Shown: positions 4,687 through 35,975 of the stretch, one piece after another | How positions within the stretch are numbered: position 1 is the first letter of the stretch | Layout: the number at the start of each line of letters is the position of its first letter | DNA from: Callorhinchus milii | Taxonomy: Eukaryota | Reading direction: 5' to 3' | DNA length: 64,000 bases | NCBI RefSeq assembly: GCF_018977255.1 | Contig: NW_024704749.1 | Coordinates: 19,034,001-19,098,000 of the forward strand | Translations under genes and position numbers: made by a program | The notes under the pieces: model-generated | What the model was told of the DNA's origin: nothing | The model's input: only the letters and a program-made list of their open reading frames with translations | Databases searched by the model: none

Positions 4687-4692
4687 ATGAGG
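4687..4692 (+). CDS. Laminin exon 1 (start, MR)
   Basis: ATG AGG|gtaagt; phase 0 joins 5262 to give the signal peptide MRRLWAPAGGCCVLCAQLCLAVLGAEG. Confidence 0.65.
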
Positions 4693-5261
4693 GTAAGTGT
4701 AAATTACTCACAAGTTACTGTGATGTACATTGGTGTGTGCTGTCACCGACCTGGGAGTGTGGACGGATAGTGTAAGAGGGAGCTTTACTCTGAATCTAAC
4801 CAACGAGTCCCGTAATTCCCCTTTAGCCAGTTTAGCAGTCGTCTTCTCTTTAAAAATCGAGGTAAAAGGCTTTCAAGATCCACCACGTTAAGATGCCCCC
4901 GTGGAAGGGCGCTCTATAAATGCAAGTCACTGATTAAGAATAAAATGATGATAATAATAATAATCCTTGCATTTGATACAGCGCCTCATCAGGTTTTCGA
5001 GACGTCTCAAAGGGCTTCGCAGAATATACCGTAAAGTGAATTGACTGTGTGTTTTTGTGGGCAAAGAATGTTGCACAATTCTGCGTTCTCTTAATTTTGG
5101 GGACCGGGAGGGTACGGAGGGCAGGGACAGGGTGGAATTTCAGATCTCAGCGCCTTGGGACGTGCTCCCGATGCGAAAGGTGCTCTAACAAATCGCCGTT
5201 TATTGTTCCGGTTGTTATCTCCTCGTAATCGGACTTTTGTTTGTGTCCTGCGTCTTTGCAG

Positions 5262-5957
5262 AGGCTCTGGGCTCCCGCTGGTGGCTGCTGCGTGCTGTGC
5301 GCCCAGCTGTGCCTGGCCGTGCTTGGTGCGGAGGGCACGGCGGCGGTGGGCGAGCGGAGCGGGGGCGCCTGCGGGGCCGGGCGGGCCTGCCACCCCACCT
5401 TCGAGGACCTGCTGCAGGAGCTGGAGTCCTTCCCGCGGCACCGCGGCGTCTCGGCCAACTCCACGTGCGGCCGGGAGCCCGAGCGGTACCGGAGGGGCGA
5501 GGAGCAGACGGAGACGTGCGACGCTTCGCGCCCTGACCTGCGCCATCCGCTCTCCTCCATCTGCGACGGCCTCAGTCGGAGGAGCGGTGCGGTCAGCCTG
5601 GGGGGCAGCTCGCTGGCTCTCGCCCACTCCTACCCTGACCTGGGCAGCTGGTGGCAGTCGGAGAGGGGCGTGTCGCCCGTCCACGTCCAACTCAGTCTAA
5701 CCCACCGCTTCCTGTTTGCCAGGACCGAGCTGGCCTTTGTCAGCCAGCGGCCCGACAGCCTGGTGCTGGAGGCCAGCGCCGACCAGGGCCACAGCTGGAA
5801 GGTCTGGCAGTACCTTGCTCATGACTGCTCGCTCTCCTTCCCCCACATCCCCACCCAGCCTGATCCCAGCCACTGGGACCCCACCGTGCCCCACTGCGAC
5901 CAGAGTTATTTTGCTCGGGAGACGTCTCTGCAGGGATCTCACTTACAATACCAGAGG
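5262..5957 (+). CDS. Laminin exon 2: signal peptide and most of a beta-type LN domain
   Basis: CGAGRACHP..DLL, SANSTCG, WWQSERGV.PV.VQL.L, RPDSLVLEASADQG.SWKVWQYLAHDC..SFP; acceptor ttgcag, donor gtaatg. Confidence 0.92.
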
Positions 5958-5967
5958 GTAATGTCCG

Positions 5968-6500
5968 CAACCGGGTGTCTGGCACGCGCGGAAACCCATC
6001 ACCGTCACCGGGCTCAAGAGTCTCCCCAATCAAACAGAGCTCCTTGTGTTCCAGCTACGTGTGGGGATTCCTGTGCACTGGAATGGAATGCGCATCCTCT
6101 CCCTGGAGAGACATGTCCTGCTTACCTAATTCCATAAGAGTATTAAGCACAGGCTGGCAAGGGCCAAGACTTGGGGACCATAGAGTGCGTGTTGGGGTAA
6201 CTGCTGGACGCTAACCAGCTAAAACAGTCATAGATCACCATCAATAGCACTGTCTGGTGGTTGTCCAGCTAGGAACACCCTACCTGTTAGGGATTTTACT
6301 TGAAGTGGTAACAGATGGTGAATGGGAAGAGTCTCTGCCCTGATTGACTGGTGAACTCTTCCAAATCCTACCAATGAACCAAGACCAGCTGCAGTGTCCT
6401 CAGCAGTGCCCTGGAGTACTGTGGACCCACCTGCCTCAGGCACTGGACTAGAGACCAGCTCAGAGGGTGGACTCGATCCTGATATTCCACTTCCATGAAT
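5968..6500 (+). mobile_element. Unclassified dispersed repeat (~500 bp)
   Basis: Shared motifs ccgggtgtctg..gaaacccatcacc, ggaatggaatgcgca and ggggtaactgctgga..ccagctaaaac recur near 10500-10810(-), 17155-17400, 25625-25920, 30660-31060 and 45650-46110(-). Confidence 0.7.
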
Positions 6501-7034
6501 ATCACTTTGGAGCTAGTTCAACCCTGAGGAGATCCTGCTTACCCCCCCCCCCTGCCCCACCCACCAAAAGCCTTCCCCGGGAGGGGACATTCCTCCGACG
6601 TGAAAGGCGCTATGCAAATGTAATTCTGTTGCTGTGGTCACAAATGGTCATTTGCAGGTTTGAGCCCTCACTGGGTGGACGGCAGGAACTTCCTGCGAGC
6701 TTCCAGAGGGTGAAAGATGTCATTGTGTTTCAGGGCAATGCCACGAGCTCTGCCTGCAGTTTCACTCTGCCTGAAGTGTAGTTTCGCTTCGCCTGTAGCA
6801 TCGCTCCACCTATAGTCCCGCACTGCCTGCATGCTCGCTCCCCCCTGAAATCCTGCCCCGCCTGTAGCCTCTCTCCGCCTGTAGTCTGGCCCTGCATGTA
6901 CTTGGTGCTTGGACCTGCCATTGCTGTGGCCTAGCTGCACGGAGTGTGTGTGTGTGTGTGTGTGTGGGTGTGTGTGTGTGTGGGTGTGTGGCTGGGGGTC
7001 TCAGGCTGATGCTCTCTGTCTCCTCACCGTCCAG

Positions 7035-7241
7035 GTGTTCTATAATGCAGCAGCCCGGCTGGGCGGGGCGTACCTGCGGAACGAGACGCTGTACCGGCAT
7101 TTCATCTTCACCGACTTGAGAATCACCTTCACCGGCTTCGGGGGCCGGGCTGCCGAGCTGCAGGATTACTACGCCGTGGCTGACTGGTCCGTCACCGGCC
7201 AGTGTGCCTGCTTCGGTCACTCCCACACGTGCAGCGGTCAA
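7035..7241 (+). CDS. Laminin exon 3: end of LN, start of LE1
   Basis: TDLRITFT...YYAVADWSVTGQCACFGH; ccag acceptor, gtcagt donor. Confidence 0.92.
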
Positions 7242-7263
7242 GTCAGTTATCCTCTACATCCCA

Positions 7264-7765: not shown

Positions 7766-7886
7766 AACAAAGCGGAGTGTGAGTGTGAGCACGGCACGAC
7801 CGGAGCCCACTGCCAGCACTGCTTGCCCCTCCTCAACCAGCAGCCGTGGGCAATGGCGATGCCAGGCAACGGGAGTGTTTGTCAGG
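7766..7886 (+). CDS. Laminin exon 4: LE1
   Basis: CECEHGTTGAHCQHCLPLLNQQPW..CQ; ctcag / gtgagt. Confidence 0.9.
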
Positions 7887-8744: not shown

Positions 8745-8900
8745 ACTGTGGCTGTGCCGGCCGGGCTCTCAGCTGTTACTTCGATGCGGTGAAAGGTTTC
8801 GGCGTCTGTGAGAACTGCAGTGAGAACACCACAGGCGAGAAATGCCACCTGTGCCGTCCGTCTTACTACAGCGACCCCGACAACACCTCACGCTGCACAG
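8745..8900 (+). CDS. Laminin exon 5: LE2
   Basis: CGCAGRALSCYFD..GVCENCSENTTGEKCHLC; acag / gtaatc. Confidence 0.9.
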
Positions 8901-9259: not shown

Positions 9260-9415
9260 CGTGTAACTGCGCAGGGGCCGGAGTTGTTGACGATGGCGTG
9301 TGCCATAACGTGACTGGGCAGTGCCACTGCAAGGCCTCTGTGCGTGGCAGGCGATGTGTTGAGTGTAAGGATGGATTCTGGGACCTCAGCGCCCGCAACC
9401 CAGATGGATGCCAAG
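9260..9415 (+). CDS. Laminin exon 6: LE3
   Basis: CNC..G..C..VTGQCHCKASVRGRRCVECKDGFWDLSARNPDGCQ. Confidence 0.92.
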
Positions 9416-9664: not shown

Positions 9665-9774
9665 GATGTCGCTGCACCGAGGCGGGCACACTGCCAGGAA
9701 GCTACTGTGACAAAGTGACCGGACAGTGTCAGTGTAAGGCTAGTGTGCAAGGCCGCCAGTGCAGCCAGTGTAAG
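9665..9774 (+). CDS. Laminin exon 7: LE4
   Basis: CRCTEAGTLPGSYCDKVTGQCQCKASVQGRQCSQCK|gtgagt. Confidence 0.92.
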
Positions 9775-10147
9775 GTGAGTGTGTCGAGAGGTGGGCTGGG
9801 GAGGTGGGAGTGGAGCGGGATGATGGATATCAGTTCCACCGTCAGCGACTGTGCTTTCAACCACTACACCCCGAAACTCTGGAACTCTCTCCCTCGATCC
9901 CTCCGCCTTGCCCCCTCCTTCCCCATTTTCAGATCACGCTTCAAGACCTTCCACTTGGTCCGTGCTTACGATCACCTCCCCTCCTCAGCCCCTCCGACTC
10001 GGTGTCGTGCTCCGCCACTGTTAAGCGCCCTGAGACACTGCCCTGTGTGAGGGGAGATATACACAAATGCAAGTTGTTGTCATTGTTGTCGTACGAGGGG
10101 ACCTCTCCAATCAGGCTGCGTTTGAGCCGGTCGTGATGTTGTTACAG

Positions 10148-10388
10148 CCTGGAACCTGGAATCTATCTGCCGAGAGTGAGAGTGGGTGTGATGTATGTGA
10201 CTGTGACCTCGGGGGTGCGCACACACACCTGTGCTCAGCAGACACAGGCCAGTGTTCGTGCCGAGGCAACATTCAAGGGCGTCGATGCGATGCCCCACGG
10301 CCTATGTTCTTCATTCCCAGCCTGGACAGTCTGCACGCTAAGGCCGAGATCTTGACTGCTGATGCCAGCAAGGTTATTCACATTGCAG
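10148..10388 (+). CDS. Laminin exon 8: end of LE4, truncated LE5, start of LF (beta domain IV)
   Basis: CDCDLGGA...CSADTGQCSCRGNIQGRRC..P.FF.PSLD.L..KAE, the typical beta-chain LE5/LF junction; G|gtaagt. Confidence 0.92.
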
Positions 10389-10903
10389 GTAAGTGTCTGT
10401 AACTCTGGACCTGACTATCGTCCTGGGGAGGAGGGGTGGGTGGTGGGGCGGGGGGGGGGGGGGTGTTGGGTGGGAGGCAAGCGGGGACTCTTTGGCGCTG
10501 AACTGGCTCCAAGGTGACATGTTTTGCCACAGAATGTCAGGGTCAAGCCAACTCTCCGTGGAATCTCGCTAGTCCAGTTCCTGAGCCAGGTGGGCGCGCA
10601 GTATTCCAGGGCACTGCCAATGGTAGACTTCAGCAGTTACCCCCAACGCACACTCTGGAGTCCCCAAGCCTTGGAGTCGAGCCAACCTGAACCTAATACT
10701 TTCCGGAATTAGGTAAGCAGGATGCATCCCTCCAGCGGGAGAGAGCGAGAGAGAGAGAAAGTCTGCATTCCATTCCAATAAACGTCTCTGGAAATTTCAT
10801 GTGTCGGCGGGATGCATGGAATTCTCAGTTTGTGCCAGGCTGACATGATTGATGTGACTTCAAATCAACACTGTTGACAAGGACCCTCTTTCTTTCATTC
10901 CAG

Positions 10904-11025
10904 ATCCTATGGGATTGGCTTTGCACTCCGGCTCTGGAGTCCTGGAACTGGGAGAGAATGACGTAGTGAGAGCCAATCTCTCCGTGCCTCGGAGTCAGCA
11001 TTACCACATCATTGCTCGCTACTTG
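10904..11025 (+). CDS. Laminin exon 9: LF domain
   Basis: SGSGVLELGENDVVRANLSVPRSQHYHIIARY resembles beta LF; phases fit. Confidence 0.85.
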
Positions 11026-11459
11026 GTAAAGGCCATCAGCAGCCTGGGCTTCCTTCTAACAGCAGCGAACTCCATAACAACAATAACAATAGCAACAACA
11101 ACAACAATAATAACAACAATAATTAATAGTAACAATAATAAAATAACTTGGTCACTCAATCCACATCTATTTGTGGGACATTGCTGTGTGCAATTGACTG
11201 CCGTATTTATCCCACAAAATACACAGTTGATCCATTTTATAATATAATGCGTGTAGAATGGTTTGGAAGAGCCACGCGACTTTGAATCTAAAGTTCCCAA
11301 AGCTTTCCACTCCGATGGAGACTAATCCGTACAGAATTAATTGCTATCAACATCTCCATTATAGTAGCAGGCGACTAGTAGGATAGTAGAAGGCCGACAA
11401 GATGGATCAAGATCATTTTTGGTCTAGCAATTCCTATGTTCCTATGTTCTCTTTGGCAG

Positions 11460-11610
11460 AGCTCAAGCGCCTCGGGATTGGGAACACTGCGGATCAAAGG
11501 GCCGGACCTCATGGCTGGGTCGTGCCGCTCAAAGCCGGAACAGGAGACGGGAACAGCTGACGCTGTGACCACCTTGTACGCTCGTTTAGAGCAGAGTTTG
11601 AACCCATCAG
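11460..11610 (+). CDS. Laminin exon 10: LF domain
   Basis: ggcag acceptor, G|gtcagt donor; open frame with one Cys (GSCR). Confidence 0.8.
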
Positions 11611-12068
11611 GTCAGTCAGCCCTGTGTGTGGGCACAGTGAATGGACATGTGCACAAGGGTGCCCTCAAATTCGCGGGAATTTCTGTGTGTGGGTGGCACG
11701 CGTATGTGTAACTCTCAGTTCGGTTTGGACACTCTTAAGCGCAGTGATGGGTTTCCGCATGTGTCACACACCCGGCTGATCATAAGAAGTCCTAATCCCT
11801 CTTTTCTTGGACGCTCTAATCCCCTTCCTTCCTCGTATTCATGTCTCATTTGTGAAGTGCGCTATATAAATGCAAGTTGTTCTTGTTGTTGTTGTTGTAA
11901 TCTGAAACACATGCCTTTGTTTCCTCAAAACAGCCACAAACAGAAGTTCCCCAGCGTTTATCCTCTCAACCTCGCTTTGGGGTCTTAAACACCCCCATCG
12001 TGTCAACCCTCAACCTGCTCGGCTCAGATGGAAAGTGTCCTGACCTCAGTTACTCTCCTGTTTTACAG

Positions 12069-12181
12069 AAGCGGTTTCCTTCGGGGCAGTTTGCTTGAGG
12101 AGAGGCTCACTGTACAGGCTGTCGCTGGCCTACAAACCCTCAGGGACCATCGCCCCACAGCCTTCTTTACTCCTGGACACA
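12069..12181 (+). CDS. Laminin exon 11: LF domain
   Basis: AVSFGAVCLRRGSLYRLSL...LLLDT, similar to beta PVCFEKG.NY.V.L...LIDS; gtgagt donor. Confidence 0.85.
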
Positions 12182-12270
12182 GTGAGTTCCAAATCATTTC
12201 AAACAACTTGCTGACTGACACACATCTGTGGTCTGTTTTACCTGACCTGATCTCCCTTCTTTTCCTGCAG

Positions 12271-12451
12271 ATCCTCCTCCTACCCGACCTCCCGGCTCTA
12301 CGAGCTTACAGCGCCCTGCCCAGCCCCCAGCGCGCTCAGGCAGAGCATTGCCTCCAGGGTAGGTGGGCTCCAGGCCGGCAGAGACCGGGAGACGGGCAGT
12401 GCCAACCGCTGGAGTTCTCTATCATGGCGGAAGTGTACGATGGGGCACAAG
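12271..12451 (+). CDS. Laminin exon 12: end of LF domain
   Basis: ILLLP..C..CQPLEFSIMAEVYDGAQ; weak donor G|gttatt. Confidence 0.85.
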
Positions 12452-12530
12452 GTTATTACATGTCACTGTATAGACACGGACAGCGAGAGAGAATCAGCAT
12501 TTACACAACCCGGTTCAGATCAGACGTGTG

Positions 12531-12905
12531 TCAGCCTGGCTCAGTTGGTAGCTCTCTCGCCTCAGATTCAGAAGGTTGTGGGTTCAAGCCCCACTTCGGG
12601 ACTTGGAATCACGTCGTCTAAGCAATGCTGGGGGTGTGGGGTCGGAGGTGTCCTCCTTCGGATGAGACGTTGAGCCCAGGTCCCGTCCGCCTGTTCGGGT
12701 GGACGCTAAAGATCCCGCGGTGCTATTCGAAAAGAGAAGGGAGTTTCTCTCTCCTGATGCTCTGACCAACAATCCCCAAATAAAATTGGTCGCTGCCTCC
12801 ATGGCTGTTGTGGGTACGTTGCTGTGCGCAATTGGCTGCTGCGTTTCGCCCACAAAACGCAGTCACGGCACTTTACAGTATATCCCGCGAAGCGCTTTTG
12901 TAAGA
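12531..12905 (+). mobile_element. Second tRNA-headed DeuSINE-type family
   Basis: ggctcagttggtagc..ggttgtgggttcaagcccc head plus the same core; related copies near 15380-15780(-), 38415-38835(-) and 60060-60350. Confidence 0.75.
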
Positions 12906-13106
12906 CATTCGGATGGAGACGGCCAATAAAGCGGTGTAATAATCCAAGGTTTATTAAGTAATACAAACAGCCTAACTTATTCTTAAACCTGAGACCATAG
13001 ATACAGTAGAATCGAATTTGGTTCCACTGGACAGTGTGCTGACCCTCTACGGCAACCCCAACTAGAGAGAATGGCATTCATTTTGGGACACAATAAAGTC
13101 CCCCTC

Positions 13107-13232
13107 GCCTGTCTGCCCCATTGCCTGTCTGCCCCATTGCCTGTCTGCCCCATTGCCTGTCTGCCCCATTGCCTGTCTGCCCCATTGCCTGTCTGCCCCA
13201 TTGCCTGTCTGCCCCATTGCCTGTCTGCCCAA
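13107..13232. repeat. 16-bp minisatellite
   Basis: Tandem gcctgtctgccccatt units. Confidence 0.9.
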
Positions 13233-13300
13233 TTCCTGTCTGATGGTTTGTCTGCCTGTTGTTTGCCTGCCGTGTGTTCTAATAACCTGTTTCTGTGCAG

Positions 13301-13447
13301 AGTGTGACTGTGATGTCTCGGGGTCTCGCAGCCGGTTGTGCCAGGGGGCGGGAGGTCAGTGTGACTGTAAGCCGCTGGTCACCGGGCGTCGGTGTGACAC
13401 GTGCGGCCCCTTCTCTTACGGCTTCCATTCATTGCACGGCTGCAGAG
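13301..13447 (+). CDS. Laminin exon 13: LE
   Basis: CDCDVSGSRSRLCQGAGGQCDCKPLVTGRRCDTCGPFSYGF..GC. Confidence 0.92.
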
Positions 13448-13718
13448 GTGAGCGATGGCACCGGGGAAGGCACCTTCAGACCCGGCAGCACCACAGTGCC
13501 AGTCACTACACCGACGGTCAACGGTCTCCCCAGCTCCACCATACACAAAACACTCCACGATCCAATTAATCCAAAACACCACCGGCCGCACACTCACCCG
13601 CACTAAACTCCGTACCCCCATCCCCCACCCCCCCGTCACACCGGCTCTAGCCGGGCCCCGCTGGCTCGGTGTCGCTGATCGGATGGATTTCAAGGTGATG
13701 CGGTCGTTGTGGTTACAG

Positions 13719-13859
13719 GGTGCGAGTGCCAGGCTGGCGGGGCGCTGAACCAGGCGTGTGATGGGCACAGTGGGCAGTGCGCCTGCAAGAGCAACGTGAC
13801 TGGACGGAGGTGCGACACCTGCGTCCAGGGATACCACGGCCTCGGTCGGGCCTCCACAG
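13719..13859 (+). CDS. Laminin exon 14: LE (Cys1-Cys7)
   Basis: CECQAGGALNQACDGHSGQCACKSNVTGRRCDTCVQGYHGLG; eighth Cys supplied by exon 16. Confidence 0.92.
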
Positions 13860-14225
13860 GTAACAGGCGCCACGTCTCCGCGGGCAACCGACACAACGCA
13901 CACACCTGGGTTCACCGACACAGCGGCACATTTACACATCGACCGACGTACCCGCACAGCGACGACATACCAACACACTCACAAAGCAGCACTCACACAC
14001 ACACACACACACCATCCTGCTTGCTGATACACTCGCTCATTCACCCCCCACCCCACCCCACCTCACCGCCACACGCACACGCACACACACACGCACACGT
14101 ACACACACACATTGTCTCTCTTAACTTCAAACTTACAGGATATTTGGCTGCACACTGACAGCGAACTCTCTCTCGCTCTCCCTTTCTCCCTTTCTCTCTC
14201 TCGCGCTCTCTGTCCATGGCTCTAG

Positions 14226-14348
14226 CTGGCTGTGCGGTAGCTGAGGGCGACAGGCTGGCATGTGGACCTCCCACCATCTCCGCTGTTGGGTGCCAGCTCC
14301 GGGGGTGCTGCTACGACAACACTTCAGGCTCGTGTTACTATTTTGGAG
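14226..14348 (+). CDS. Laminin exon 15: trefoil (P-type) domain
   Basis: CAVAEGDRLACGPPTISAVGCQLRGCCYDNTSGSCYY follows the trefoil pattern C..R..CG.P.I....C..RGCC.D....C.Y; tag / gtaatt, 123 nt, phase 1-1. Confidence 0.88.
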
Positions 14349-14504
14349 GTAATTCAGTCCCTCCTGCACTATCTGTAATAGGCCATATACCATCCCCATC
14401 ACCATATTATCTTCTTTCTTATCTTCTTTCTTATCTTCTTTCTCATCCCTCCCTCCCTCCCTCCCATCCTATCTTTCTTATCTTTCTTATCTTTCCTATC
14501 TCAT

Positions 14505-15000
14505 AGAGCTCAGTGTTTAGAGCGCTCGCCTCACAAGCGAGAGGACCTGGGTTCGATTCCCGGCAGGGCCAAACGTTGGCCAAGTTTCCTTACTCCACAT
14601 CCCTCTGTTTACCTGGCAGTAAGCAATGTTAGTCGATTGGCGAATCACTTTTCCGGGGGTAATAATTCCTTCAAAAANTAATAATAATTTGGACACTTAA
14701 TCCACGACTGTTTGAGGGACACTGCTGGTGTACTAATGGGCTGCTGCGTTTCACCCACAAAACATAGTCAATTCACTTTACACTTCTGTGAAGCTCTTTG
14801 AGACTATAAGGGAAAAGTAGATAGTTATTTGAGGAGGACGTTTGCAGGGCTCTGGAGAGAGAGCGGGGGAATGGGATTGATTTGAGTAGCTATTTTCAAA
14901 GAGCCGAATGGCCTCCTTCTGTGCTGTATAATTCTATGGTTCTGTGAGACATCTAGAAGATGTGAGAAGGCACTATATCAAATATAAAGATGATTATTAT
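14505..15000 (+). mobile_element. tRNA-derived SINE interrupted by a CR1-like 3' fragment
   Basis: SINE head and core; insert ending gaatggcctccttctgtgctgtataattctatggttct; SINE tail resumes near 14945. Confidence 0.65.
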
Positions 15001-15155
15001 ACCCTCCCCATCACCATGTACATTCCCCATCACCCTATACCCTTCTCGTCAGTGTACACCCCACCTCCGCTGCTCCCCTCCCACCTGTATCACGCTGTAT
15101 CTCTGCTCAGCTCGTGTGTCCTGGCCCCTCTCTAACGCTGTGTTTTTCCCGGCAG

Positions 15156-15279
15156 GGCTGGGCTGCCGCCCGTGTGCTTGTGACCTGGAATTCTCCGTGA
15201 ACAACACGTGCACTGAGACTGGGCAATGTGTGTGCAAAGCGGGGGTCACTGGGTTAAAGTGTACAGAGTGCTTACCCAG
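15156..15279 (+). CDS. Laminin exon 16: LE
   Basis: GLGCRPCACDLEFSVNNTCTETGQCVCKAGVTGLKCTECLP. Confidence 0.9.
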
Positions 15280-15895
15280 GTTAGCAGCTCCATGATATCC
15301 ACGTTAGTACGGTTTGTATAAGAATGGCACTACAGCCCAGAACTGCCTGTAACAGGTCATCACCATAAACACAGAGATAGATAATAATAATCCTTGCATT
15401 TGATATAGCGCTTTTCACGTCGGGAGGACGTCCCAAAGCGCTTCACAGAACACACTGTAAAGTGAATTGACTGTACATTTGTGGGCGAACGCGGCAGCCA
15501 ATTGCGCACAGCAATGTCCCACAAAGAGTCACAGAAACCAGTGATCAATTATTGGTGAGATTGGTGGCCAGGATACCAGGAGAGAGAAACTCTTCCCGAA
15601 CAGGCAGATGGGACCTTGGTTTAACGTCTCATCCCAAGGACGGCACTTCCGACAATGCAGCGTATCCCCCCACCACCGCACTGGGGTGCCATCTTAGACT
15701 ATGTGAGTTCAAGTCCTGACGTGGGGCTTGAATCCACAACCTTCTGTTTCAGAGGCGAGAGTGTTAGCACCGCCCCAAGGATGTGTGCGCTACCCACTGG
15801 GGCTCCGAGGCATCTGTTGTCCGTTGGGTGTTTGGTGCGGGTGGGTTGGGGGCCGGACAAGCGTACACACATTGACTCTGGTTTCTCGCCCTCAG

Positions 15896-16625: not shown

Positions 16626-16842
16626 GATATTACGGGCTGGGACCCTGGGGTAGGGATGGCTGTATCCCTTGCTTCTGCTTCGGACACTCAACGAGCTGCA
16701 CCTCGGCTCCCGGCTTCACCCTGACCGCGGTCCGGCATCAACGCACCATCTTCAACCCCGAGGATCTCTTGAGCAGACCCTGGAAGGGAGTGGACGGCCA
16801 AGGGCGGGAGGTTGCAGTGACTGAACTGGCGGAACTGCCCAG
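16626..16842 (+). CDS. Laminin exon 18: LE and start of gamma-type L4 domain
   Basis: GYYGL..GCIPCFCFGHSTSCTSAPGF...WKGVDGQG, the gamma-chain style entry into L4. Confidence 0.92.
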
Positions 16843-17624: not shown

Positions 17625-17749
17625 GTTTGTGTACCAGATACGCTCTGCTGACCCGGATGTGTTTTTTTCAGCTCCACCTGAGTTTTTAGGTGATAAAAGA
17701 ACCGCTTACCTGCAGCACCTGAGCTTCACACTCAGCCAGTCCCACACAG
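17625..17749 (+). CDS. Laminin exon 19: L4 domain
   Basis: VFFSAPPEFLGDKRTAYLQHLSFTL. Confidence 0.92.
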
Positions 17750-17974: not shown

Positions 17975-18087
17975 ACTCCCAAATGGTGTCGGAGGCTGGG
18001 GACGTGTTTCTAGAAGGACGGCTGCTGTCAGCGCCCCTGGTGACCCGTCTGCCCGAGACCCCGTCTGTCAATCCCACCGAGTACAGG
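17975..18087 (+). CDS. Laminin exon 20: L4 domain
   Basis: GDVFLEG...PSVNPTEYR|gtacgt. Confidence 0.88.
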
Positions 18088-18567: not shown

Positions 18568-18693
18568 GTGAAGCTGGAGGACGGTGTGTGGTTCCTGGGG
18601 AGTGTGGCGCTGGGCACAGTGGCCAGCGCACAGCAGCTGATGAGAGTCCTGACCGAGATCAGCAGCATTAAAATTCGAGCCAAGTACAGCCAG
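18568..18693 (+). CDS. Laminin exon 21: L4 domain
   Basis: VKLEDGVW...LMRVLTEISSIKIRAKYS. Confidence 0.92.
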
Positions 18694-18841
18694 GTCAGAG
18701 CGATCGCACTCCTCCCTCTCCCTTACCCCACCCCACTGCCCCCCACGGGGTCTCCCCCCTCTTCTCTGAAGTCTCCACCCCTTCCCCCCCACCCCCTCCC
18801 ACCCCGGCTCTCGCTGTGTCTGATTCTGGTTTGATTGACAG

Positions 18842-18958
18842 GTGCCAGGGAGCTGGGTGGTCCTGCACTCGGCGGCGATCACCCTGGCAGCTCCTGGCAG
18901 CAACGCTTCACCTCCTGTGGGCATCGTGGAGCAATGTTCCTGCCCTGAGGAGTACACG
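18842..18958 (+). CDS. Laminin exon 22: end of L4, LE resumes
   Basis: ITLAAPG...VEQCSCPEEYT|gtgagc. Confidence 0.9.
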
Positions 18959-19573: not shown

Positions 19574-19793
19574 GGCCGCTCCTGTGAGCGCTGTGCTGTG
19601 GGATACACCCGAGCGCTCCTTCAGGAATTCCAGGATCCGTTCGGAATCTGCCGCCCATGTTACTGCCACAAGCACTCGGCCAGCGCCTGTGATCCGGAGA
19701 GCGGCCGCTGTGACTGTCAGCACTTCACCGACGGTGATCACTGCCAGAGATGCCGGCAGGGTTTCTATGGAGACTCCACTCGAGGCCGGTCAG
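19574..19793 (+). CDS. Laminin exon 23: LE
   Basis: GRSCERCAVGYTR..PFGICRPCYCHKHSASACDPESGRCDCQHFTDGDHCQRCRQGFYGDSTRG (gamma-like LEb). Confidence 0.93.
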
Positions 19794-23340: not shown

Positions 23341-23528
23341 ATGACTGTCAGCCATGTTTCTGCCCCGGGATAGTGGGCTTCTCTCCGTCCCTCAATGCCT
23401 TTGCTGCCAGCTGTGTGCTGGAGACAGATGGTAACACCACCTGCCTCGGCTGTGCTGAAGGCCACACGGGTCGGCACTGCCAGCTCTGTGACACTGGTTA
23501 CTACGGAGACCCACAGAGCACCGACCAG
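23341..23528 (+). CDS. Laminin exon 24: LE (GC donor)
   Basis: DDCQPCFCPG...C..CLGCAEGHTGRHCQLCDTGYYGDP; the only phase-compatible donor is CAG|gcaag. Confidence 0.88.
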
Positions 23529-23866: not shown

Positions 23867-24038
23867 ATTGAAGGGGGAGCCTGCAGGCGATGTCGGTGCA
23901 CCAACAGCCCTGCTCTGTGCGACAGAACGACAGGACTCTGCACCCATTGTGCCCAGGACACCTCTGGCTTTCACTGTGAGCAGTGTAAGGAGGGATACTT
24001 CGGGCAGGTCACCCCAGGACTGGGCAGTAACTGCACAG
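23867..24038 (+). CDS. Laminin exon 25: LE
   Basis: GGACRRCRC..CDRTTGLCTHCAQDTSGFHCEQCKEGYFG..NCT. Confidence 0.92.
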
Positions 24039-25393: not shown

Positions 25394-25593
25394 CGTGTGA
25401 CTGTGAGCCATCAGGCAGCGCAGGGTGGTGTGACAGGCAGTCGGGAACGTGTCCTTGTCTCCGCAACGTGGCGGGGCCCAAGTGCAGCGGATGCCGGAGT
25501 GCCAGCTTCTGGGGCTTTCACAGCAGCCAGTTCCTGGGATGTCAGCCCTGTGCCTGTCACCAGCCAGGGTCAGCCTCCTCTGCCTGTCACCCT
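25394..25593 (+). CDS. Laminin exon 26: LE
   Basis: CDCEPSGSAGWCDRQSGTCPCLRNVAGPKC..FWGF..GCQPCACHQPGSASSACHP. Confidence 0.92.
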
Positions 25594-26209: not shown

Positions 26210-26306
26210 GTGACAGGCCAGTGCGAGTGCCTGGCTCACACTGTGGGTCAGCACTGTGAGGACTGTGAGGACGGCTTCTACTGGGATTCGCTGCAGAGGT
26301 GCACAG
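26210..26306 (+). CDS. Laminin exon 27: LE
   Basis: VTGQCECLAHTVGQHCEDCEDGFYWDSLQRCT. Confidence 0.9.
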
Positions 26307-26665: not shown

Positions 26666-26794
26666 CGTGTGAGTGTGACGTGCGGGGCACGAGAGCCCGA
26701 GCTGTGACCTGCGACCTTCACACTGGCCAGTGTCACTGCCTTCCAGATGTGGTAGGGCAGCACTGTGACCGGTGTCAGCCCTTCGGCACCCAGG
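26666..26794 (+). CDS. Laminin exon 28: LE
   Basis: CECDVRGT..TCDLHTGQCHCLPDVVGQHCDRC; G|gtaagc. Confidence 0.92.
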
Positions 26795-27018: not shown

Positions 27019-27158
27019 AGGATTTCCCCCGTTGTCACCCGTGTCCTGAGTGTTTTGTTCAGTGGAACCACACGCTCCGGGACCTGGGCTCTGAGTTGTT
27101 GCGGCTGTCAGGCACACTGCAGTCTGAGGCGCTAATTTACAGTGAGAATAACCCACAG
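27019..27158 (+). CDS. Laminin exon 29: last LE Cys, CxxC, start of coiled coil
   Basis: FPRCHPCPECFVQWNHTLRDL matches the beta-chain FP.C.PC..CF..W junction. Confidence 0.9.
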
Positions 27159-28015: not shown

Positions 28016-28572
28016 CTCTCCGCAGGTATCAGCAGGTGCTCCGGGCTGCTGGAGGAGAGCCGGCGAGAGCTGTCGTCGCAGAACGAGACCCTGCGGCAGC
28101 TGCTGCGGTTGGACCCAATTTCCAGCCTCGGCTCAAGCGACCTCTCTGGGCTGCGTGGGACCATCGACGGGTTCCTCGGCGCTGTGCGGCACCTCCGCAG
28201 CCAGGCCAACGCCACCGCGCAGCAGACCCGCCTGCACCTCTCTCGCTCGCGCTCCGCAGCGGCCCGCTCACACGCGCTGGCTGCAGAGAGCCGGACGCTG
28301 AGAGACGCCGCCGCTCGCAGCCTGAGCGCCCTTCGCTCCCTGCGGCAGGAGGCGGACGGTTGGACCTCCAGCGAAGCCGCAAGGACGTTACAGAGACAAG
28401 CCGCCCAGCTGGACACCCGGCTGGCGCAACTCCAGCCGGACCTGAGCCTCTTAAAGGGGCAGATCCACAATTGACCCTCGCTCGGGCCTTGGCAGACAGC
28501 CAGGTTCGCACGGCCGTCCTCGACACCACCAACAACCTGAGCCGAGTGTTGGAGGATTTACACCACGTTCAG
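28016..28572 (+). CDS. Laminin exon 31: coiled coil, with an apparent 1-nt frameshift at ~28471
   Basis: Heptad-like ORF to TGA at 28472-28474; helical sequence continues in another frame (LTLARALADSQVRTAVLDTTNNLSRVLEDLHHVQ) to donor gtgtgt. Confidence 0.75.
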
Positions 28573-28877: not shown

Positions 28878-29056
28878 GAAACCCGGTTGCACCTGCGGCA
28901 TTCTCAGGAGCAGAGTGAGGAGTCGGGGCGGGCTGTGGGCGCTCTGGGTGCCCTGACAGAGAAGACGAGACGGGAGCTGGTTGCACACCTGGAGCAGCTG
29001 CAGCAGAAGCAGCGCAGGGCGGACTCAGTGCTGCAAGGGACTGAGTCGCTGCACCG
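28878..29056 (+). CDS. Laminin exon 32: coiled coil
   Basis: ETRLHLRHSQEQ...LEQLQQKQRRADSVLQ; ttgcag / gtgaga. Confidence 0.8.
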
Positions 29057-29648: not shown

Positions 29649-29822
29649 TCTCTTGCAGGACACAACGTCCAGTCCCCCAGCAGCTCTGCAGAACATTCTG
29701 GAAGTCGTGGATGAGCTGACGGCAATGAGTGCCAGTGATGGTGATGTGACAGTGGCCAGGACAGAGGCTGAGGCTGGGCGTCAGGTGGCACAGAGCTCCC
29801 TGCACAGATCCACACAGGCTTT
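29649..29822 (+). CDS. Laminin exon 33: coiled coil
   Basis: SPPAALQNILEVVDELTAM...AEAGRQVAQ; needs the aag acceptor at 29646-29648 to keep phase; gtaagt donor. Confidence 0.7.
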
Positions 29823-32730: not shown

Positions 32731-32872
32731 GCTTGCAGCTCAAGGTGTTGTATCAGCGAGGCGAGACATGGAAACACAGACAGCGACTGTGAGGAGCGAG
32801 CTACAACGTGTACAAACCACACTGGAGCACATCGCACCACTGCTAGCGGTTTCTCAGAAGAGAGCCAGGCGT
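32731..32872 (+). CDS. Laminin exon 34: coiled coil
   Basis: LAAQGVVSARRDMETQTATVRSELQRVQTTLEHI; phase 2-0, gtaagt donor. Confidence 0.75.
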
Positions 32873-33516
32873 GTAAGTTAGTCGTTAGCTGTCGAGTGCC
32901 TTAATTTTGCACTCAAGAGAGCACATGGTGTAATAATAAATAATAATCCTTGCATTTGATATAGCACCTTGTCATGTTCTTCGGATGTCTCAAAATGCTT
33001 CACAGAATATAATGTAAAATTAATCGACTGTATATTTTGTGGGCAAAACGTGGCAGTCAATAATTGCGCGAAGCAATGTCTCACAAACAGTTGTGGATAG
33101 TGATTTTTTTTTTGAAGGAATTATAATCCCCCGGAAAGCGATCCACCAATTGACTTAACAATTGGGTTCCTACTTACCGCTCGGTAAACAGAAACGTGTG
33201 GAGTGAGGAAACTTGCCAAAGGTTTTGACCTGCCGGGGAATCGAACTTGGGTCCTCTGGCTTGTGAGGCGAGCATGTTAACTACTACGCTACAGGACCCA
33301 AGCGAGAATCGTCAGCTGTAGAGTGCTGGAAGAGTCCCCTACTCTCCCTACCCTCCATCCGCCCCCTGAACCCAGTCCCCTGCTCGAGTCCAAATCTCTG
33401 ACTGTCCAGCACCTCGGGATGTCCTTCCGAGGTGAAAGGCTCCATACAAATGTAATTTGTTGTTGTAATCTACACCTAACTCAATACTTACTTGATTGCT
33501 TTTATTTTGTTAACAG

Positions 33517-33681
33517 GAGGAGGAATTGCTAGAGATCAGACTGCAGGACGTTGCTGAGGTTGAGACGCTGGTGGCGGAGGTGGAGCGAGAGACTGAGTGC
33601 CACACCTCCCAGCGACTACAGCTGTCCCAGCTCCACACTCACCTGCTCAGCCTACACCAAGCACTGCAACATAATGTCCAG
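33517..33681 (+). CDS. Laminin exon 35: coiled coil
   Basis: EEELLEIRLQDVAEVETLVAEVERE...; aacag / gtaact. Confidence 0.78.
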
Positions 33682-35004
33682 GTAACTCCCCTCACTGCCC
33701 AGGTAACTACAGCCACTGCCCAGGTAACTCCCCTCGCTGCCCAGGTAACTGCAATCACCGGTGGAGATTAGTCCAGCACCACACCCTCTGGATTCCTGCA
33801 CTTCCTGTCCCGGAGCTCTTTCTAAGCAGCCTTTTGCATCACAGTTCTCTGTAGGAATGCTTGGCCCCATTCCCGGATTTGTTTTAAGGGATTTATTATT
33901 GTGCGGATTCCACGGTTACAACGTCTGTAGCGTCTTGGAAGCGAGTCCATTCGGAATGTCCTCCAGATGGTTAGGTGCCACTCGATACCTTCACACAAGT
34001 TGGACAGCCTCCTGTCTGACCAAGGCTGCCGCTCCGCACAGTGGGAGTGCTACACATACCTGTCAGGAGCATCTATTAAAGGCTGGAGTGAAGGCTGCAC
34101 ACACAGGAGCCTCTGACATATCACTGGCACAAAGCGATTGCACTCATTTAATTAGGAAACCACTTTGAGACTTTGCTGAATGGCAGGCCAGGCCTTCTGT
34201 CTATTGCAGTCTGTTTTGTAATGGTTTATATTATGGCTGGGATTCCGAGGAAGGGTGTTAAGAAGGTACTGGGAAAGAGCAGGGAAGTGAGGTTGGAGTA
34301 GTTAGCATTGATGGATTGGTACTTTTTAAACGGGGCGAAACCTTAGGCCTCTGTTTACCTAGTAGTAAGTAGGAACCCAGGTGTTAGTCAATTGGTGGAT
34401 CGCTTTTTGGGGTAATAATCTCTTAAAAAATATATAATAATTTGGTCAATCAATTCACGAATATTTGTGGGACACAGCTATGCGCTATTGGCTGCCGCGT
34501 TCTACCCACAAATTACAGTCAATCCACTTTACAATATATTCTGTGAAGTCCTTCGAGACGTCTCAGGATTGTGATAAGGCGCTATATCAAATGCAGGGAT
34601 TATTATTATTACTATTACCCAGCCATACACCTCTGTACTGGAATTTGTGCTGCTAAGACTGTAGCAGAATCTTAAAATTATGGCAGAAAAGTCATCATAA
34701 ATGATCTCCCACATAAATTGGTCACTTGCTTCTATTTGTGTGTGTGCGCAAATTGACTGTCGAGTTTGTCTACAATTAAACAGTCACTACACTTCACAGC
34801 ATCCGGGAATGGGGCAAGTGTTTTGATGTTACAGATACTGCAACAAATGCAAAGATTGTTATTATTAATAATAATAATAATGTGGTCTTACGGGCTAAGA
34901 CCAGGTGGAATTCTGGCCTCAATTCTCCTAATCGTTTGATTTGTTGCTTTGGAAAAGGGAAAGTTGCACAGAATAACTTTTCAGCCAAACTTGTGGTTTC
35001 ACAG

Positions 35005-35173
35005 AGGAGGAGAAACAGAAGTGGAGCAATGTCAGTGGCGGAGAGCTGTGTGGAGCAGGAGAGTCGGGTTACAGGCGCAGCCCTGGAGCGAGCTTCCCAA
35101 GCCCAGCGACGCATAGAGCAGCTGGCCCGAGCCCAGACCCAACTCACCCACAACACGCTGCAGGAACTGAGAG
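35005..35173 (+). CDS. Laminin exon 36: coiled coil
   Basis: ALERASQAQRRIEQLARAQTQLTHNTLQELR; acag / gtcggt. Confidence 0.8.
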
Positions 35174-35844
35174 GTCGGTAGTGTTTGAGCGCTCTGGGAC
35201 GCCAACCCTCCTCGCGGAGGGTGCCGTACATCTGCAGGTTGTTGTTGTTGTGGTGCTGAACGTCCGGCGTTTCGACTATTTCTGAGCGACCAGTTCGGGA
35301 GAATCACCGGTTTCTTTGCGAAAGGTTTAAATCTTAAAACAAATCTTGGGGAAAAAAAACAAACAGAAAAAATAATAATTTGGTCACTCGACCCGCTGCT
35401 GTCCGTTTGTGGGACACTGCTGTGCGCAATGGGCTGCCTCGTTGCGCCCGCAAAATATACAATCAATTCCATTTGGAATGTATTCTGTGAAACGCTTTGA
35501 GACATCTTGAAGACGTGATAGGGCGCTATATCAAATGCAAGGATTATTATTATTATTGAGGACTACAGTAGAGCCCTGTTATAAGATAAGCGCTGGGGTC
35601 TATAAAATGACAACCCGCCTTATTCGACTGTATTCCACTCACCTGTTGAAAATACCTGCGTTTATGGCTTCGGATTAAATATCCAGTGTAGCTCCTTTTG
35701 TATGTCTCCAAGCAATTGCTCCCCACTGAATACTCCATTCCCCTGCACTTCTCCCCACTCCACGTGCCATTCCCCTGCACCACTCCCCGCTGCACATACT
35801 ACCCCTGCCGTGGCCACCCCTGGTCTCTCTGCCTGTTGTTCCAG

Positions 35845-35975
35845 AGGTCCTTCAAGTCTTTAGGAAACAAGAGGAAGCTCTGAGTTCGCTGGAGAAGAGA
35901 GTCACCAGATTGCAGGAGCAGCAGGGCCACTTACTGGCCGGTTTCCAGCAGGCAGAACCACCGGCCTGTAACTGA
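35845..35975 (+). CDS. Laminin terminal exon
   Basis: FRKQEEALSSLEKRVTRLQEQQ...PACN*; penultimate Cys as in beta chains. Confidence 0.82.

What the first reader, a model, noticed from the sequence alone, without database searches (positions are those of the whole stretch)
4687..35975. A laminin chain with beta/gamma hybrid architecture carrying both LF and L4 domains
Seen: one continuous, phase-compatible exon chain encodes a beta-type LN, LE1-5, a beta-type LF domain (10148-12451), further LEs, a gamma-type L4 domain embedded in a split LE (16626-18958), gamma-like then beta-like LEs, a beta-type FP.C.PC..CF..W junction, and a ~600-aa coiled coil ending in ..CN*. Known: vertebrate beta chains (LAMB1/2/4) have LF but no L4; gamma chains (LAMC1-3) have L4 but no LF; alpha3B/alpha5 have both but end in LG domains, which are absent here. 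I recall beta/gamma-like hybrids being reported from invertebrates but not from mammals. Inference: this is either an ancient extra chain class retained in this lineage or a recombination product, and it could form non-canonical laminin trimers.
Basis: partly seen in the sequence, partly recalled or inferred. Interest (0 to 1): 0.95.

Follow-up and report, generated by a model that had tools for sequence, protein, structure and literature searches.

The report
Fourth laminin chain type in chimaera
The elephant shark genome carries a laminin gene of an ancient extra chain type (with both LF and L4 domains) that is otherwise seen only in invertebrates, which would mean that vertebrates did not all reduce to the three classic laminin chain types.

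Summary
I traced 36 + strand exons (4687-35975). They encode a beta-like LN, five LE, LF, four LE, an L4 inside a split LE, more LE, a beta-type junction and a ~530-aa coiled coil ending ..ACN*. All exon junctions are phase-compatible.

The window is Callorhinchus milii: two UniRef fragments are 99-100% identical.

The gene is not a beta/gamma recombinant. It matches, collinearly and exon by exon, a family with the same architecture in echinoderms, hemichordates, molluscs, annelids, a brachiopod and cnidarians. Its LN sits inside that family's clade (97/87). An AU test does not reject a position beside the beta clade (p 0.116).

No other vertebrate member appeared in two large protein searches.

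Three caveats apply:
- One apparent 1-nt frame break lies in the first large coiled-coil exon (about 28.45 kb), either an assembly indel or a real lesion.
- One LF exon is placed by phase alone.

A complete trefoil domain sits on a phase 1-1 exon between two LE exons. A first-reader note of this scan (s1-905784) already flags it on this window.

Verdict: new member of a known kind.

The parts
4687..4692 (+). proposed first coding exon (ATG AGG), donor AGG|GTAAGT
   Evidence: Sequence read. Inferred only: the next exon has no in-frame ATG before its signal-peptide-like stretch.
5262..5957 (+). exon: signal-peptide-like stretch plus most of the LN domain
   Evidence: Pfam Laminin_N 6.1e-27. PDB beta-1 is the best match. 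Family profile 121.8 bits against beta 80.4 and gamma 13.5. Splice sites.
7035..7241 (+). exon: end of LN, start of LE1
   Evidence: Family profile 58.9 bits against beta 18.3. Phase 0-0.
7766..7886 (+). exon: LE1
8745..8900 (+). exon: LE2
   Evidence: Family 54.3 bits against beta 30.4. Acceptor.
9260..9415 (+). exon: LE3
9665..9774 (+). exon: LE4 (part)
10148..10388 (+). exon: LE5 and first ~25 residues of LF
   Evidence: Pfam EGF_laminin 2.1e-9. LF profile positions 2-27, E 3.2e-3.
10904..11025 (+). exon: LF
   Evidence: LF profile E 2.2e-7. Family 16.7 bits against beta 1.2.
11460..11610 (+). exon: LF middle (inferred)
   Evidence: The only open AG..GT candidate of the right phase between its neighbours. 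No profile support.
12069..12181 (+). exon: LF
   Evidence: LF profile positions 116-154, E 2.2e-4
12271..12451 (+). exon: end of LF
   Evidence: LF profile E 5e-10. Family 20.9 bits against beta 3.7.
13301..13447 (+). exon: LE6
13719..13859 (+). exon: LE7
14226..14348 (+). phase 1-1 exon encoding a whole trefoil (P-type) domain; inclusion in the mRNA is unknown
   Evidence: Pfam Trefoil 8.6e-11, profile 1-42 of 43. PDB TFF3 5.1e-5. None of the 23 family proteins lists a trefoil Pfam family.
15156..15279 (+). exon: LE8
   Evidence: Family 46.4 bits
15896..16044 (+). exon: LE9
16626..16842 (+). exon: first half of the split LE and start of L4
   Evidence: Family 51.9 bits against gamma 35.8 and beta 8.3
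17625..17749 (+). exon: L4
   Evidence: Pfam Laminin_B 4e-6. Family 29.3 bits against gamma 17.2.
17975..18087 (+). exon: L4
   Evidence: Family 21.1 bits against gamma -0.7
18568..18693 (+). exon: L4
   Evidence: Pfam Laminin_B 1.9e-4. Family 24.7 bits against gamma 8.5.
18842..18958 (+). exon: end of L4, start of the second half of the split LE
19574..19793 (+). exon: LE after L4
   Evidence: Pfam EGF_laminin 2.6e-12. Family 78.9 bits, gamma 66.0.
23341..23528 (+). exon: LE
   Evidence: Pfam. Family 63.8 bits.
23867..24038 (+). exon: LE that aligns with the nidogen-binding LE of gamma-1 but has a loop five residues shorter
   Evidence: Alignment
25394..25593 (+). exon: LE
26210..26306 (+). 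exon: LE
26666..26794 (+). exon: LE
27019..27158 (+). exon: beta-type junction (FP.C.PC..CF..W) and start of the coiled coil
   Evidence: Family 19.7 bits, beta 18.8, gamma -1.7. Translation.
28016..28572 (+). exon: coiled coil, with an apparent 1-nt frame break near 28450-28470 at a run of A and G
   Evidence: Three-frame reading. Exon lengths summed.
28878..29056 (+). exon: coiled coil
29649..29822 (+). exon: coiled coil
   Evidence: The acceptor is weaker than a neighbouring out-of-phase one at 29659.
32731..32872 (+). exon: coiled coil
33517..33681 (+). exon: coiled coil; a 21-nt tandem repeat follows the donor
35005..35173 (+). exon: coiled coil with the single conserved coil cysteine of the family
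   Evidence: Comparison with P0006 by eye.
35845..35975 (+). last exon: ..PPACN, stop at 35973-35975
   Evidence: C-termini of the family.

Best explanation
This is a single elephant-shark (Callorhinchus milii) gene. It encodes a member of an ancient laminin chain family that combines a beta-like LN domain, an LF domain, an L4 domain and a beta-like coiled-coil tail without LG domains. This is the 'chimeric beta/gamma-like' chain type of invertebrates.

Shown: the architecture, the collinear homology to that family, the species, and the absence of any closer vertebrate protein in the databases searched.

Inferred: the protein is secreted, joins a laminin heterotrimer through its coiled coil, and offers its LN domain as one of the three short arms of a laminin network. 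I think the beta slot most likely (about 55%). The reasons are that its LN is sister to beta LN, its junction motif and near-terminal cysteine are beta-like, and it lacks gamma-1's nidogen-binding loop and C-terminal glutamate. The gamma slot has about 25%, because NCBI's automatic annotation names its members in cnidarians gamma-1. The extra L4 and the optional trefoil module would give that arm additional binding surfaces.
For: - Species: P0001 and P0002 (UniRef, Callorhinchus milii) are 100% and 99% identical to the LN exon.
- Family: P0006 (Acanthaster planci XP_022106047, 2099 aa) and 22 more proteins carry LN plus LE plus L4, and most also the Pfam LF family PF21199. They rank above every alpha chain in a profile search.
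- Collinearity: the window's stop-free pieces hit a 9-member family profile in order, positions 32 to 1543 across 5370-27122.
- Per-exon class profiles: family 1083 bits, beta 686, gamma 618, alpha 619. The family wins for the LN, LF and L4 exons.
- Best BLAST hit is a family member for 17 of 28 exons, including 5 of 5 L4 exons.
- LN tree: the window row lies in a starred 97/87 set with 14 bilaterian family members. A beta clade of 16 rows (96/92) does not hold it.
- A profile of the family plus 7 window exon rows matches beta-2 LE5-LF-LE6 (5lf2_A, 1.5e-51) across the whole chain, and the perlecan L4 region (1.6e-74).
- The exon count between LF and L4 (four LE exons) equals the family's.
- The total of 6305 nt gives about 2101 aa, against 2035-2199 aa for most family members.
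- 0 of 17 family members and not the window have the gamma-1 loop NIDPNAV. The window ends ..ACN, like the family's near-terminal Cys.
Against: - One frame break lies inside the coil exon at about 28.45 kb, so the gene as assembled does not encode the full protein.
The run listing gives only a guess that X1 is RNA.
- The AU test does not reject the window's LN being one clade with beta (lnL difference 15.5, p 0.116).
- Support for the whole family clade is only 88/67.
- Pfam finds no LF on single exons. Single-exon searches against solved structures gave nothing for LF or L4.
- One LF exon and the first exon are inferred from phase alone.
- The coiled-coil exons match the family profile only weakly (E 0.08 to 3), though in order.
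- Generic LE exons do not discriminate between classes.
- The trimer slot is inference only.
Confidence: 0.8

Rival explanations
1. The locus is a unitary pseudogene, or a gene dying in this lineage. It belongs to the same ancient family, but the frame break in the coiled-coil exon is real, so no full-length chain is made.
For: - Frame break at about 28.45 kb. The exon sum is one short of a multiple of three.
- No other vertebrate member was found, so loss is the rule in vertebrates.
- The LN is divergent: at most 38% identity to any row of the tree, with an odd residue make-up.
- The Ensembl-derived models P0001 and P0002 are messy fragments.
Against: - Only one lesion in about 6.3 kb of coding sequence. 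The other 35 exons are open, with phase-compatible AG/GT sites.
- The LE cysteine patterns, the six trefoil cysteines and the family's coil and C-terminal cysteines are kept.
- The break sits at a run of A and G, a typical place for a consensus indel. A paper listing describes a long-read elephant-shark assembly (PMC8302630, listing). I do not know that the window comes from it.
Confidence: 0.27
2. A lineage-specific fusion or recombination of a vertebrate beta-type laminin gene (LN, LF) with a gamma-type one (L4 and the following LE).
For: LN is beta-like against solved structures. The LE exon right after L4 scores best with a lamprey gamma-1 in BLAST (87 against 81 bits).
Against: - The same architecture exists, full length, in at least six invertebrate phyla.
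- LN, LF and L4 exons all score higher with that family than with profiles that include vertebrate beta or gamma.
- The L4 exon rows lie nearest family members in a tree, though without starred support.
- The tail after L4 ends in a beta-type junction, not a gamma one.
Confidence: 0.03
3. Two neighbouring genes, or an assembly misjoin, read as one.
For: A single N at 14678 lies between the trefoil exon and the next LE exon. No transcript evidence links the halves.
Against: - No stop, terminal exon or new LN/signal exon lies between the halves.
- Phases match across the N (b=1 to a=1).
- The number of LE exons between LF and L4 is exactly the family's.
- The upstream half has no coiled coil of its own.
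Confidence: 0.04

Closest known systems
Invertebrate 'chimeric beta/gamma-like' laminin chains. Examples: Acanthaster planci XP_022106047 (named beta-1-like), Patiria miniata (gamma-1-like), Ptychodera flava (beta-1-like), Lingula anatina (lam-2), Hydra vulgaris (gamma-1). The chain type is named for sponges in PMC10280926, which cites Fahey and Degnan 2012.
   Same: - Same domain order and about the same length.
- Collinear profile match.
- LN in the same clade.
- Short loop in the LE that aligns with gamma-1's nidogen site, and a cysteine two residues from the end.
   Different: - Only 37-59% identity to P0006 per exon for the first seven exons.
- It carries a trefoil exon that none of the 23 family proteins lists.
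- It is in a vertebrate.
- It has one frame break.
Vertebrate laminin beta-1/beta-2 (LAMB1, LAMB2)
   Same: - LN closest to beta-1 among solved chains.
- LF after LE5. The family profile matches 5lf2_A over the whole chain.
- Beta-type junction motif, and a cysteine near the C-terminus.
   Different: - It has an L4 domain, which beta chains lack.
- No cysteine-rich knob is visible in the coil exons, which hold single cysteines only. The knob as a beta feature is recalled, not tested.
- LN lies outside the 16-row beta clade, although this is not rejected by AU.
Vertebrate laminin gamma-1 (LAMC1)
   Same: L4 inserted in a split LE, followed by LE repeats. The family profile matches gamma-1 LE7-9 (1npe_B, 3.6e-31).
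   Different: - LN is not gamma-type: 13.5 bits against 121.8, and the gamma clade at 100/99 excludes it.
- It has LF.
- It lacks the NIDPNAV loop present in 3 of 3 vertebrate gamma-1 references.
- It lacks the ..E.P tail.
Laminin alpha-3B/alpha-5
   Same: Long short arm with more than one globular insert.
   Different: No LG domains. The open frame stops at 35975, and the next gene is on the other strand. The alpha profile scores lowest on LN.
Trefoil factor (TFF) P-domains
   Same: The exon at 14226-14348 matches Pfam Trefoil end to end, and TFF3, TFF2 and TFF1 chains. It has six cysteines.
   Different: It sits as one symmetric exon inside a laminin gene, between the seventh and eighth cysteine of an LE module.

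Membership tests
beta/gamma-like (LF + L4) laminin chain family | N-terminal LN domain | tested here: met
   Pfam Laminin_N 6.1e-27
beta/gamma-like (LF + L4) laminin chain family | LF domain after the fifth LE | tested here: met
   Four exon pieces match the family's LF profile in order, E 5e-10 to 3.2e-3. The family's LF region matches 5lf2_A. Pfam PF21199 itself was not hit by single exons.
beta/gamma-like (LF + L4) laminin chain family | L4 (Laminin_B) domain inside a split LE, downstream of LF on the same chain | tested here: met
   Pfam Laminin_B on two exons. Five exons are collinear with profile positions 917-1154. Being on one chain rests on phase and order, not on a transcript.
beta/gamma-like (LF + L4) laminin chain family | Full-length collinear similarity, higher than to beta, gamma or alpha | tested here: met
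   1083 against 686, 618 and 619 bits. 17 of 28 exons have a family member as best BLAST hit.
beta/gamma-like (LF + L4) laminin chain family | LN groups with the family in a tree | tested here: inconclusive
   It lies inside a starred 97/87 set of 15 rows. The AU test does not reject a clade with beta (p 0.116).
beta/gamma-like (LF + L4) laminin chain family | Coiled coil without LG domains, cysteine close to the C-terminus | tested here: met
   Translations. C-termini of 17 members. Profile matches of the coil exons are weak.
beta/gamma-like (LF + L4) laminin chain family | Intact open reading frame, expressed | tested here: not met
   One frame break in exon 28016-28572.
canonical laminin beta chain | No L4 domain | tested here: not met
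   L4 is present
canonical laminin beta chain | Cysteine-rich knob interrupting the coiled coil (recalled feature) | tested here: not met
   The coil exons hold single cysteines only
canonical laminin gamma chain | Gamma-type LN; no LF | tested here: not met
   Gamma profile 13.5 bits on the LN exon. The gamma clade excludes it. LF is present.
canonical laminin gamma chain | Nidogen-binding loop NIDPNAV and glutamate third from the end (both recalled as gamma-1 features) | tested here: not met
   The loop is present in 4 of 10 gamma references, including 3 of 3 vertebrate ones. It is absent from the window's aligned exon. The window's tail is ..PPACN.
laminin alpha chain | C-terminal LG domains | tested here: not met
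   Stop at 35975. Downstream ORFs are MYMK-like (DUF3522) on the minus strand and ADAMTS-spacer on the plus strand.
trefoil (P-type) domain | Full-length match with six cysteines | tested here: met
   Pfam PF00088 8.6e-11, 42 bits against a cut-off of 21. TFF3 5.1e-5.

The most novel reading that the evidence does not exclude
Callorhinchus (perhaps holocephalans generally) keeps a working fourth class of laminin chain that every other sampled vertebrate has lost, and has added a trefoil module to it by exon shuffling. The chain replaces beta (or gamma) in tissue-specific heterotrimers, giving a laminin with a short arm that carries LF, trefoil and L4 together and cannot bind nidogen. This would be a basement-membrane or mucus-facing matrix type unknown in other vertebrates.
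Probability: 0.35. Interest if true: 0.8.

Novelty: new member of a known kind. Interest (0 to 1): 0.66.

Why it matters
Texts on the vertebrate matrix count laminin chains as alpha, beta and gamma only. [quoted passage not shown]

A vertebrate copy of the beta/gamma-like chain shows that this older type survived into jawed vertebrates, and it dates its loss in other lineages. It also gives a vertebrate in which the partners and role of this chain could be studied next to the classic chains.

The family's position as sister to beta in the LN tree (88/77) fits the suggestion in PMC10280926 that beta chains arose later than beta/gamma-like ones.

The trefoil exon would be a clean case of phase 1-1 exon shuffling into an LE module.

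Tried and rejected
- Pfam on LF pieces: no LF family hit on any of the pieces tried.
- Single exons against solved structures (LF exons J and H, L4 exons P and R): nothing significant. The top hits were Frizzled-10, NOMO2, perlecan at E 1.1, and designed armadillo proteins.
- A search for the missing middle LF exon with the family profile found nothing. I placed it by phase only, after a candidate at 11561-11776 gave no fitting splice sites.
- I considered a short intron instead of a frame break at 28.45 kb. The only GT donor in reach (28386) is weak. Using it would remove coil-like sequence in both frames, so I rejected this.
- I considered that the run X1 (share 0.22) shows expression, because the exons make up 0.21-0.24 of the stretch searched by my own sum. 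I did not use it as evidence. The run type is a guess, and 217 million letters of DNA over a genome of about 1 Gb (size recalled) would give a similar share.
- I looked for closer relatives among the unnamed fragments. 15 of 150 score best with the family profile. The best of them, P0004, is 61% identical to a sea-urchin member, so it is not a vertebrate. Names for the others were not on record.
- The sturgeon hit P0003 (48% over 84 residues) falls in the beta clade on a long branch.
- Papers: Fahey and Degnan 2012 and Whittaker et al. 2006 are not held. What they say about this chain type is known to me only through the passage of PMC10280926 and from recall.
- Searches for 'laminin delta', 'fourth laminin', 'hybrid laminin', 'laminin chain type', 'noncanonical laminin' and 'atypical laminin' found no description of this chain in a vertebrate. 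Nor did 'chimeric laminin', 'LamIVB', 'laminin IV type B', 'laminin-related protein' and 'LamIVA', or laminin with Callorhinchus / elephant shark.
- Supplementary files were not opened. Additional file 3 (Fig. S7b) of PMC10280926 may show the sponge architectures.
All searches were exon by exon, or with database proteins, so no whole-protein Pfam scan, fold or tree of the window's product was made.

Full report
WHAT IS THERE

The window is vertebrate DNA with many interspersed repeats. It holds single N letters at 14678 and 44306.

Stop-free pieces on the + strand between 5.2 and 36 kb carry laminin-like sequence. Of ten first pieces sent to Pfam:
- 5229-6134 gave Laminin_N, E 6.1e-27.
- One piece gave a laminin EGF domain.
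- 17608-17838 and 18475-18831 gave Laminin_B (the L4 domain).
- The two pieces from the middle and end of the supposed LF region gave nothing.

Among solved structures the LN exon is closest to laminin beta-1 (8dmk_B 1.1e-16, 4aqs_A 2e-16), then netrin-4. 18 sequences matched at E up to 0.001.

WHOSE GENOME, AND WHO ARE THE RELATIVES

A search of 1.84 billion representative proteins with the 200-residue LN exon gave:
- 346 hits at E up to 0.001
- 41 at E up to 1e-10
- 3 at E up to 1e-30.

The three best hits:
- Two are fragmentary UniRef predictions from Callorhinchus milii, 100% and 99% identical. One is named 'Netrin 5', the other 'Laminin N-terminal domain-containing protein'.
- The third is a sturgeon protein, 48% identical over 84 residues. 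It later fell in the beta clade.

All other hits are 45% identical or less. So the window is elephant shark, and no closer vertebrate LN exists in that library.

tblastn of P0006 on the window gives collinear matches from LN to the junction.

THE FAMILY

A search with residues 540-1180 of P0006 found 47 proteins at E up to 1e-10 among 8000 scored candidates. At the top are proteins of about 2100 aa from starfish, crinoids, sea urchins, a sea cucumber, a brittle star and an abalone. Most hold the Pfam families for LF (PF21199), L4 (PF00052), LN and LE.

A profile of nine of them plus seven window exons as separate rows (alignment A1) found 936 proteins at E up to 1e-20 among 8000 candidates. 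The 23 best are all of this type. They add:
- hemichordates (Ptychodera, Glandiceps)
- annelids (Owenia, Dimorphilus)
- Lingula
- Elysia
- cnidarians: Hydra, Nematostella, and a Logan protein whose cluster holds Montipora proteins.

Below them come alpha chains, among them alpha-5 of six sharks and rays. Elasmobranch proteomes were therefore among the candidates, yet no vertebrate protein of the LF+L4 type was listed. This is absence from annotated proteins within the candidates scored, not proof of absence from genomes.

NCBI's automatic annotation names the members beta-1-like, gamma-1-like, alpha-1-like or alpha-2-like without system. Canonical gamma-1-like proteins exist in the same species as family members: Ptychodera, Owenia and Haliotis.

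THE GENE MODEL

A profile of nine family members hits the window's stop-free pieces in strict order, profile positions 32 to 1543 over 5370-27122.

The LF region:
- An LF-only profile finds four exon pieces in order, with E 5e-10, 2.2e-7, 2.2e-4 and 3.2e-3.
- A fifth LF exon was needed to close the reading phase.
- 11460-11610 is the only open AG..GT candidate of the right phase.
- It looks like the family's variable LF middle by eye, but no profile supports it.

With simple splice-site scores I fixed 36 exons. Every junction has matching phases.

The trefoil exon:
- 14226-14348 is phase 1-1, so it can be in or out of the mRNA without changing the frame.
- It matches Pfam Trefoil end to end (8.6e-11), and TFF3, TFF2 and TFF1 chains.
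- None of the 23 family proteins lists that Pfam family.
- A note of this scan (s1-905784) had flagged it. My test agrees.

The last exon ends ..PPACN, with the stop at 35973-35975.

The coiled-coil exons match the family profile only weakly (E 0.08 to 3), but in the right order.

THE FLAW

In exon 28016-28572 the coil-like frame runs into TGA at 28469-28471. The neighbouring frame turns coil-like just there, and runs to a good donor at 28572.
- No usable donor/acceptor pair bypasses the site.
- The 36 exons sum to 6305 nt, one short of 6306, which would be 2101 codons plus the stop.
- That length is close to the family's 2035-2199 aa.
- The site is a short run of A and G.

I worked beside that stretch afterwards.

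The run listing shows one run, guessed to be RNA, that holds 0.22 of the sampled words of 10100-19100, and another from the same study with 0.06. This fits tissue-specific expression of the exons, but it equally fits thin DNA coverage. I do not count it as evidence.

ANCIENT CLASS OR RECOMBINANT?

I built one profile each for:
- the family: 17 proteins, none a vertebrate by name or nearest relative (some rows carry no name)
- beta: 13 proteins, with vertebrates
- gamma: 13 proteins, with vertebrates
- alpha: 10 proteins.

I then scored the 28 exons from LN to the junction one by one.

| Exons | Family (bits) | Best rival (bits) |
|---|---|---|
| All 28, summed | 1083 | beta 686, alpha 619, gamma 618 |
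| Main LN exon | 121.8 | beta 80.4 (gamma 13.5) |
| LF exons H, I, J | 16.7, 4.8, 20.9 | beta 1.2, 1.4, 3.7 |
| L4 exons O, P, Q, R, S | 51.9, 29.3, 21.1, 24.7, 11.3 | gamma 35.8, 17.2, -0.7, 8.5, 8.4 |

Plain BLAST against the same 53 proteins:
- A family member is best for 17 of 28 exons, including the four LN/LE1-2 exons, 2 of 4 LF-only exons (H, J), and 5 of 5 L4 exons.
- Beta is best for 5, gamma for 3 and alpha for 3.
- Those 11 are the generic LE exons, the unsupported LF exon, the trefoil exon and one tied LF exon, mostly within a few bits of the family's best score.

The exon after L4 is gamma-like, the junction exon is beta-like, and the LE exons between are ambiguous.

The LN tree has 53 rows and 237 columns (IQ-TREE with two supports):
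- The window's row sits in a starred set (97/87) with 14 bilaterian family members.
- Family plus window is one side of a branch at 88/67, next to a beta clade of 16 rows (96/92). The two together have 88/77.
- Gamma (100/99) and alpha lie outside.

Against this:
- The AU test does not reject a tree that holds the window together with all beta rows (lnL lower by 15.5, p 0.116).
- The window's row has a long branch (1.3) and an odd residue make-up.

In a quick tree of L4 domains, with the five window exons as separate short rows, the four rows reported have family members as their nearest rows. No starred set holds them, and the fifth row was not printed.

The A1 profile matches:
- beta-1 LN-LEa: 4aqs_A, 2.6e-122
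- the whole beta-2 LE5-LF-LE6 chain: 5lf2_A, 1.5e-51, profile 478-777
- a perlecan fragment with L4: 9i5a_A, 1.6e-74, profile 876-1275
- gamma-1 LE7-9: 1npe_B, 3.6e-31.

Taken together, architecture, collinearity, per-exon scores and the LN tree favour an old chain class kept in this lineage. A recent beta/gamma recombination, a misjoin or two genes are unlikely. The four LE exons between LF and L4 are exactly the family's number, and phases match across the N at 14678.

HOW IT LIKELY WORKS (INFERENCE)

The protein has what a laminin chain needs to join a heterotrimer and a network:
- a signal-peptide-like start
- LN
- a rod of LE modules
- paired cysteines at the start of the coil
- a long heptad-rich tail
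- a cysteine two residues from the end.

Beta-like traits:
- the LN relationship
- the junction motif (family 19.7 bits, beta 18.8, gamma -1.7)
- the near-terminal cysteine.

Gamma-1 traits that it lacks:
- The loop NIDPNAV is found in 4 of 10 gamma references, including 3 of 3 vertebrate ones. It is in 0 of 17 family members, and the window's aligned exon is five residues shorter there.
- It also lacks the ..E.P tail.

That these two features serve nidogen and integrin binding is recalled knowledge, not tested here. I therefore favour the beta slot. The gamma slot remains possible, since cnidarian members are the proteins named gamma-1 there. The coil exons show only single cysteines, so the beta knob (recalled) seems absent.

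WHAT IS KNOWN

[quoted passage not shown] It does so for sponges, citing Fahey and Degnan 2012 and Whittaker et al. 2006. [quoted passage not shown] Both cited papers are not held.

A review of echinoderm matrix counts five to eight laminin genes 'of all three types' and does not single this chain out (PMC10381214, passages). [quoted passage not shown]

My searches found no report of such a chain in a vertebrate. Subscription journals and supplements were not searched.

SURROUNDINGS

- Upstream, notes of this scan place a TOR1AIP-like gene at 632-2513 and an SNHG7-like/DIPK1B pair before the window. I did not test these.
- Downstream, a minus-strand exon at 41060-41398 matches DUF3522, the family of myomaker (6.1e-11).
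- Plus-strand pieces at 58.5-60.9 kb match ADAMTS cysteine-rich (weak, below cut-off) and spacer domains (3.2e-8). The gene names MYMK and ADAMTSL2 are my reading, not a tool result.

VERDICT

The gene is a new (first vertebrate) member of a known but poorly described chain type, with a lineage-specific trefoil exon. Whether it is alive is open.

Confidence:
- 0.8 that it is a single gene of this family
- about 0.6 to 0.7 that it is functional.

Noticed in passing
window 14226-14348: A complete trefoil (P-type) domain on one phase 1-1 exon, between the seventh and eighth cysteine of an LE module of the laminin gene. It is absent from the Pfam lists of the 23 invertebrate family proteins. Already noted by the scan as s1-905784.
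   Followed up: yes
window 28440-28475: Apparent 1-nt frame break at a short run of A and G inside a coiled-coil exon. The total exon length is one short of a multiple of three.
   Followed up: partly
window 41060-41398 (minus strand): First-exon-like ORF matching DUF3522 (6.1e-11), which I read as myomaker (MYMK). It lies tail to tail with the laminin gene.
   Followed up: partly
window 58560-60877 (plus strand): Pieces matching ADAMTS cysteine-rich (weak) and ADAMTS spacer (3.2e-8) domains, probably an ADAMTSL2-like gene.
   Followed up: partly
window 47270-48590: About 1.3 kb of very G+C-rich simple repeat (GC 0.67 in 46-48 kb), open in several frames on both strands (Gly/Trp-rich one way, Pro-rich the other). 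It lies beside a CpG-rich stretch at 46.1-47.2 kb.
   Followed up: no
window 33660-33750: A 21-nt tandem repeat directly after the donor of the coil exon 33517-33681. It repeats the donor site four times (equal scores at 33681, 33702, 33723 and 33744), so alternative donors could add 7-residue units.
   Followed up: no
window 632-2513 and the laminin gene: A TOR1AIP-like gene (scan note s1-905951) lies next to a laminin gene. From memory, TOR1AIP1/2 lie near LAMC1 in mammals, so an old linkage of the two gene families is conceivable.
   Followed up: no
proteins P0204, P0203/P0441, P0209: The cnidarian proteins that NCBI names laminin gamma-1 (Hydra, Montipora), and a Nematostella protein, carry LF and L4 and fall in the hybrid family's LN clade, not with bilaterian gamma.
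   Followed up: partly
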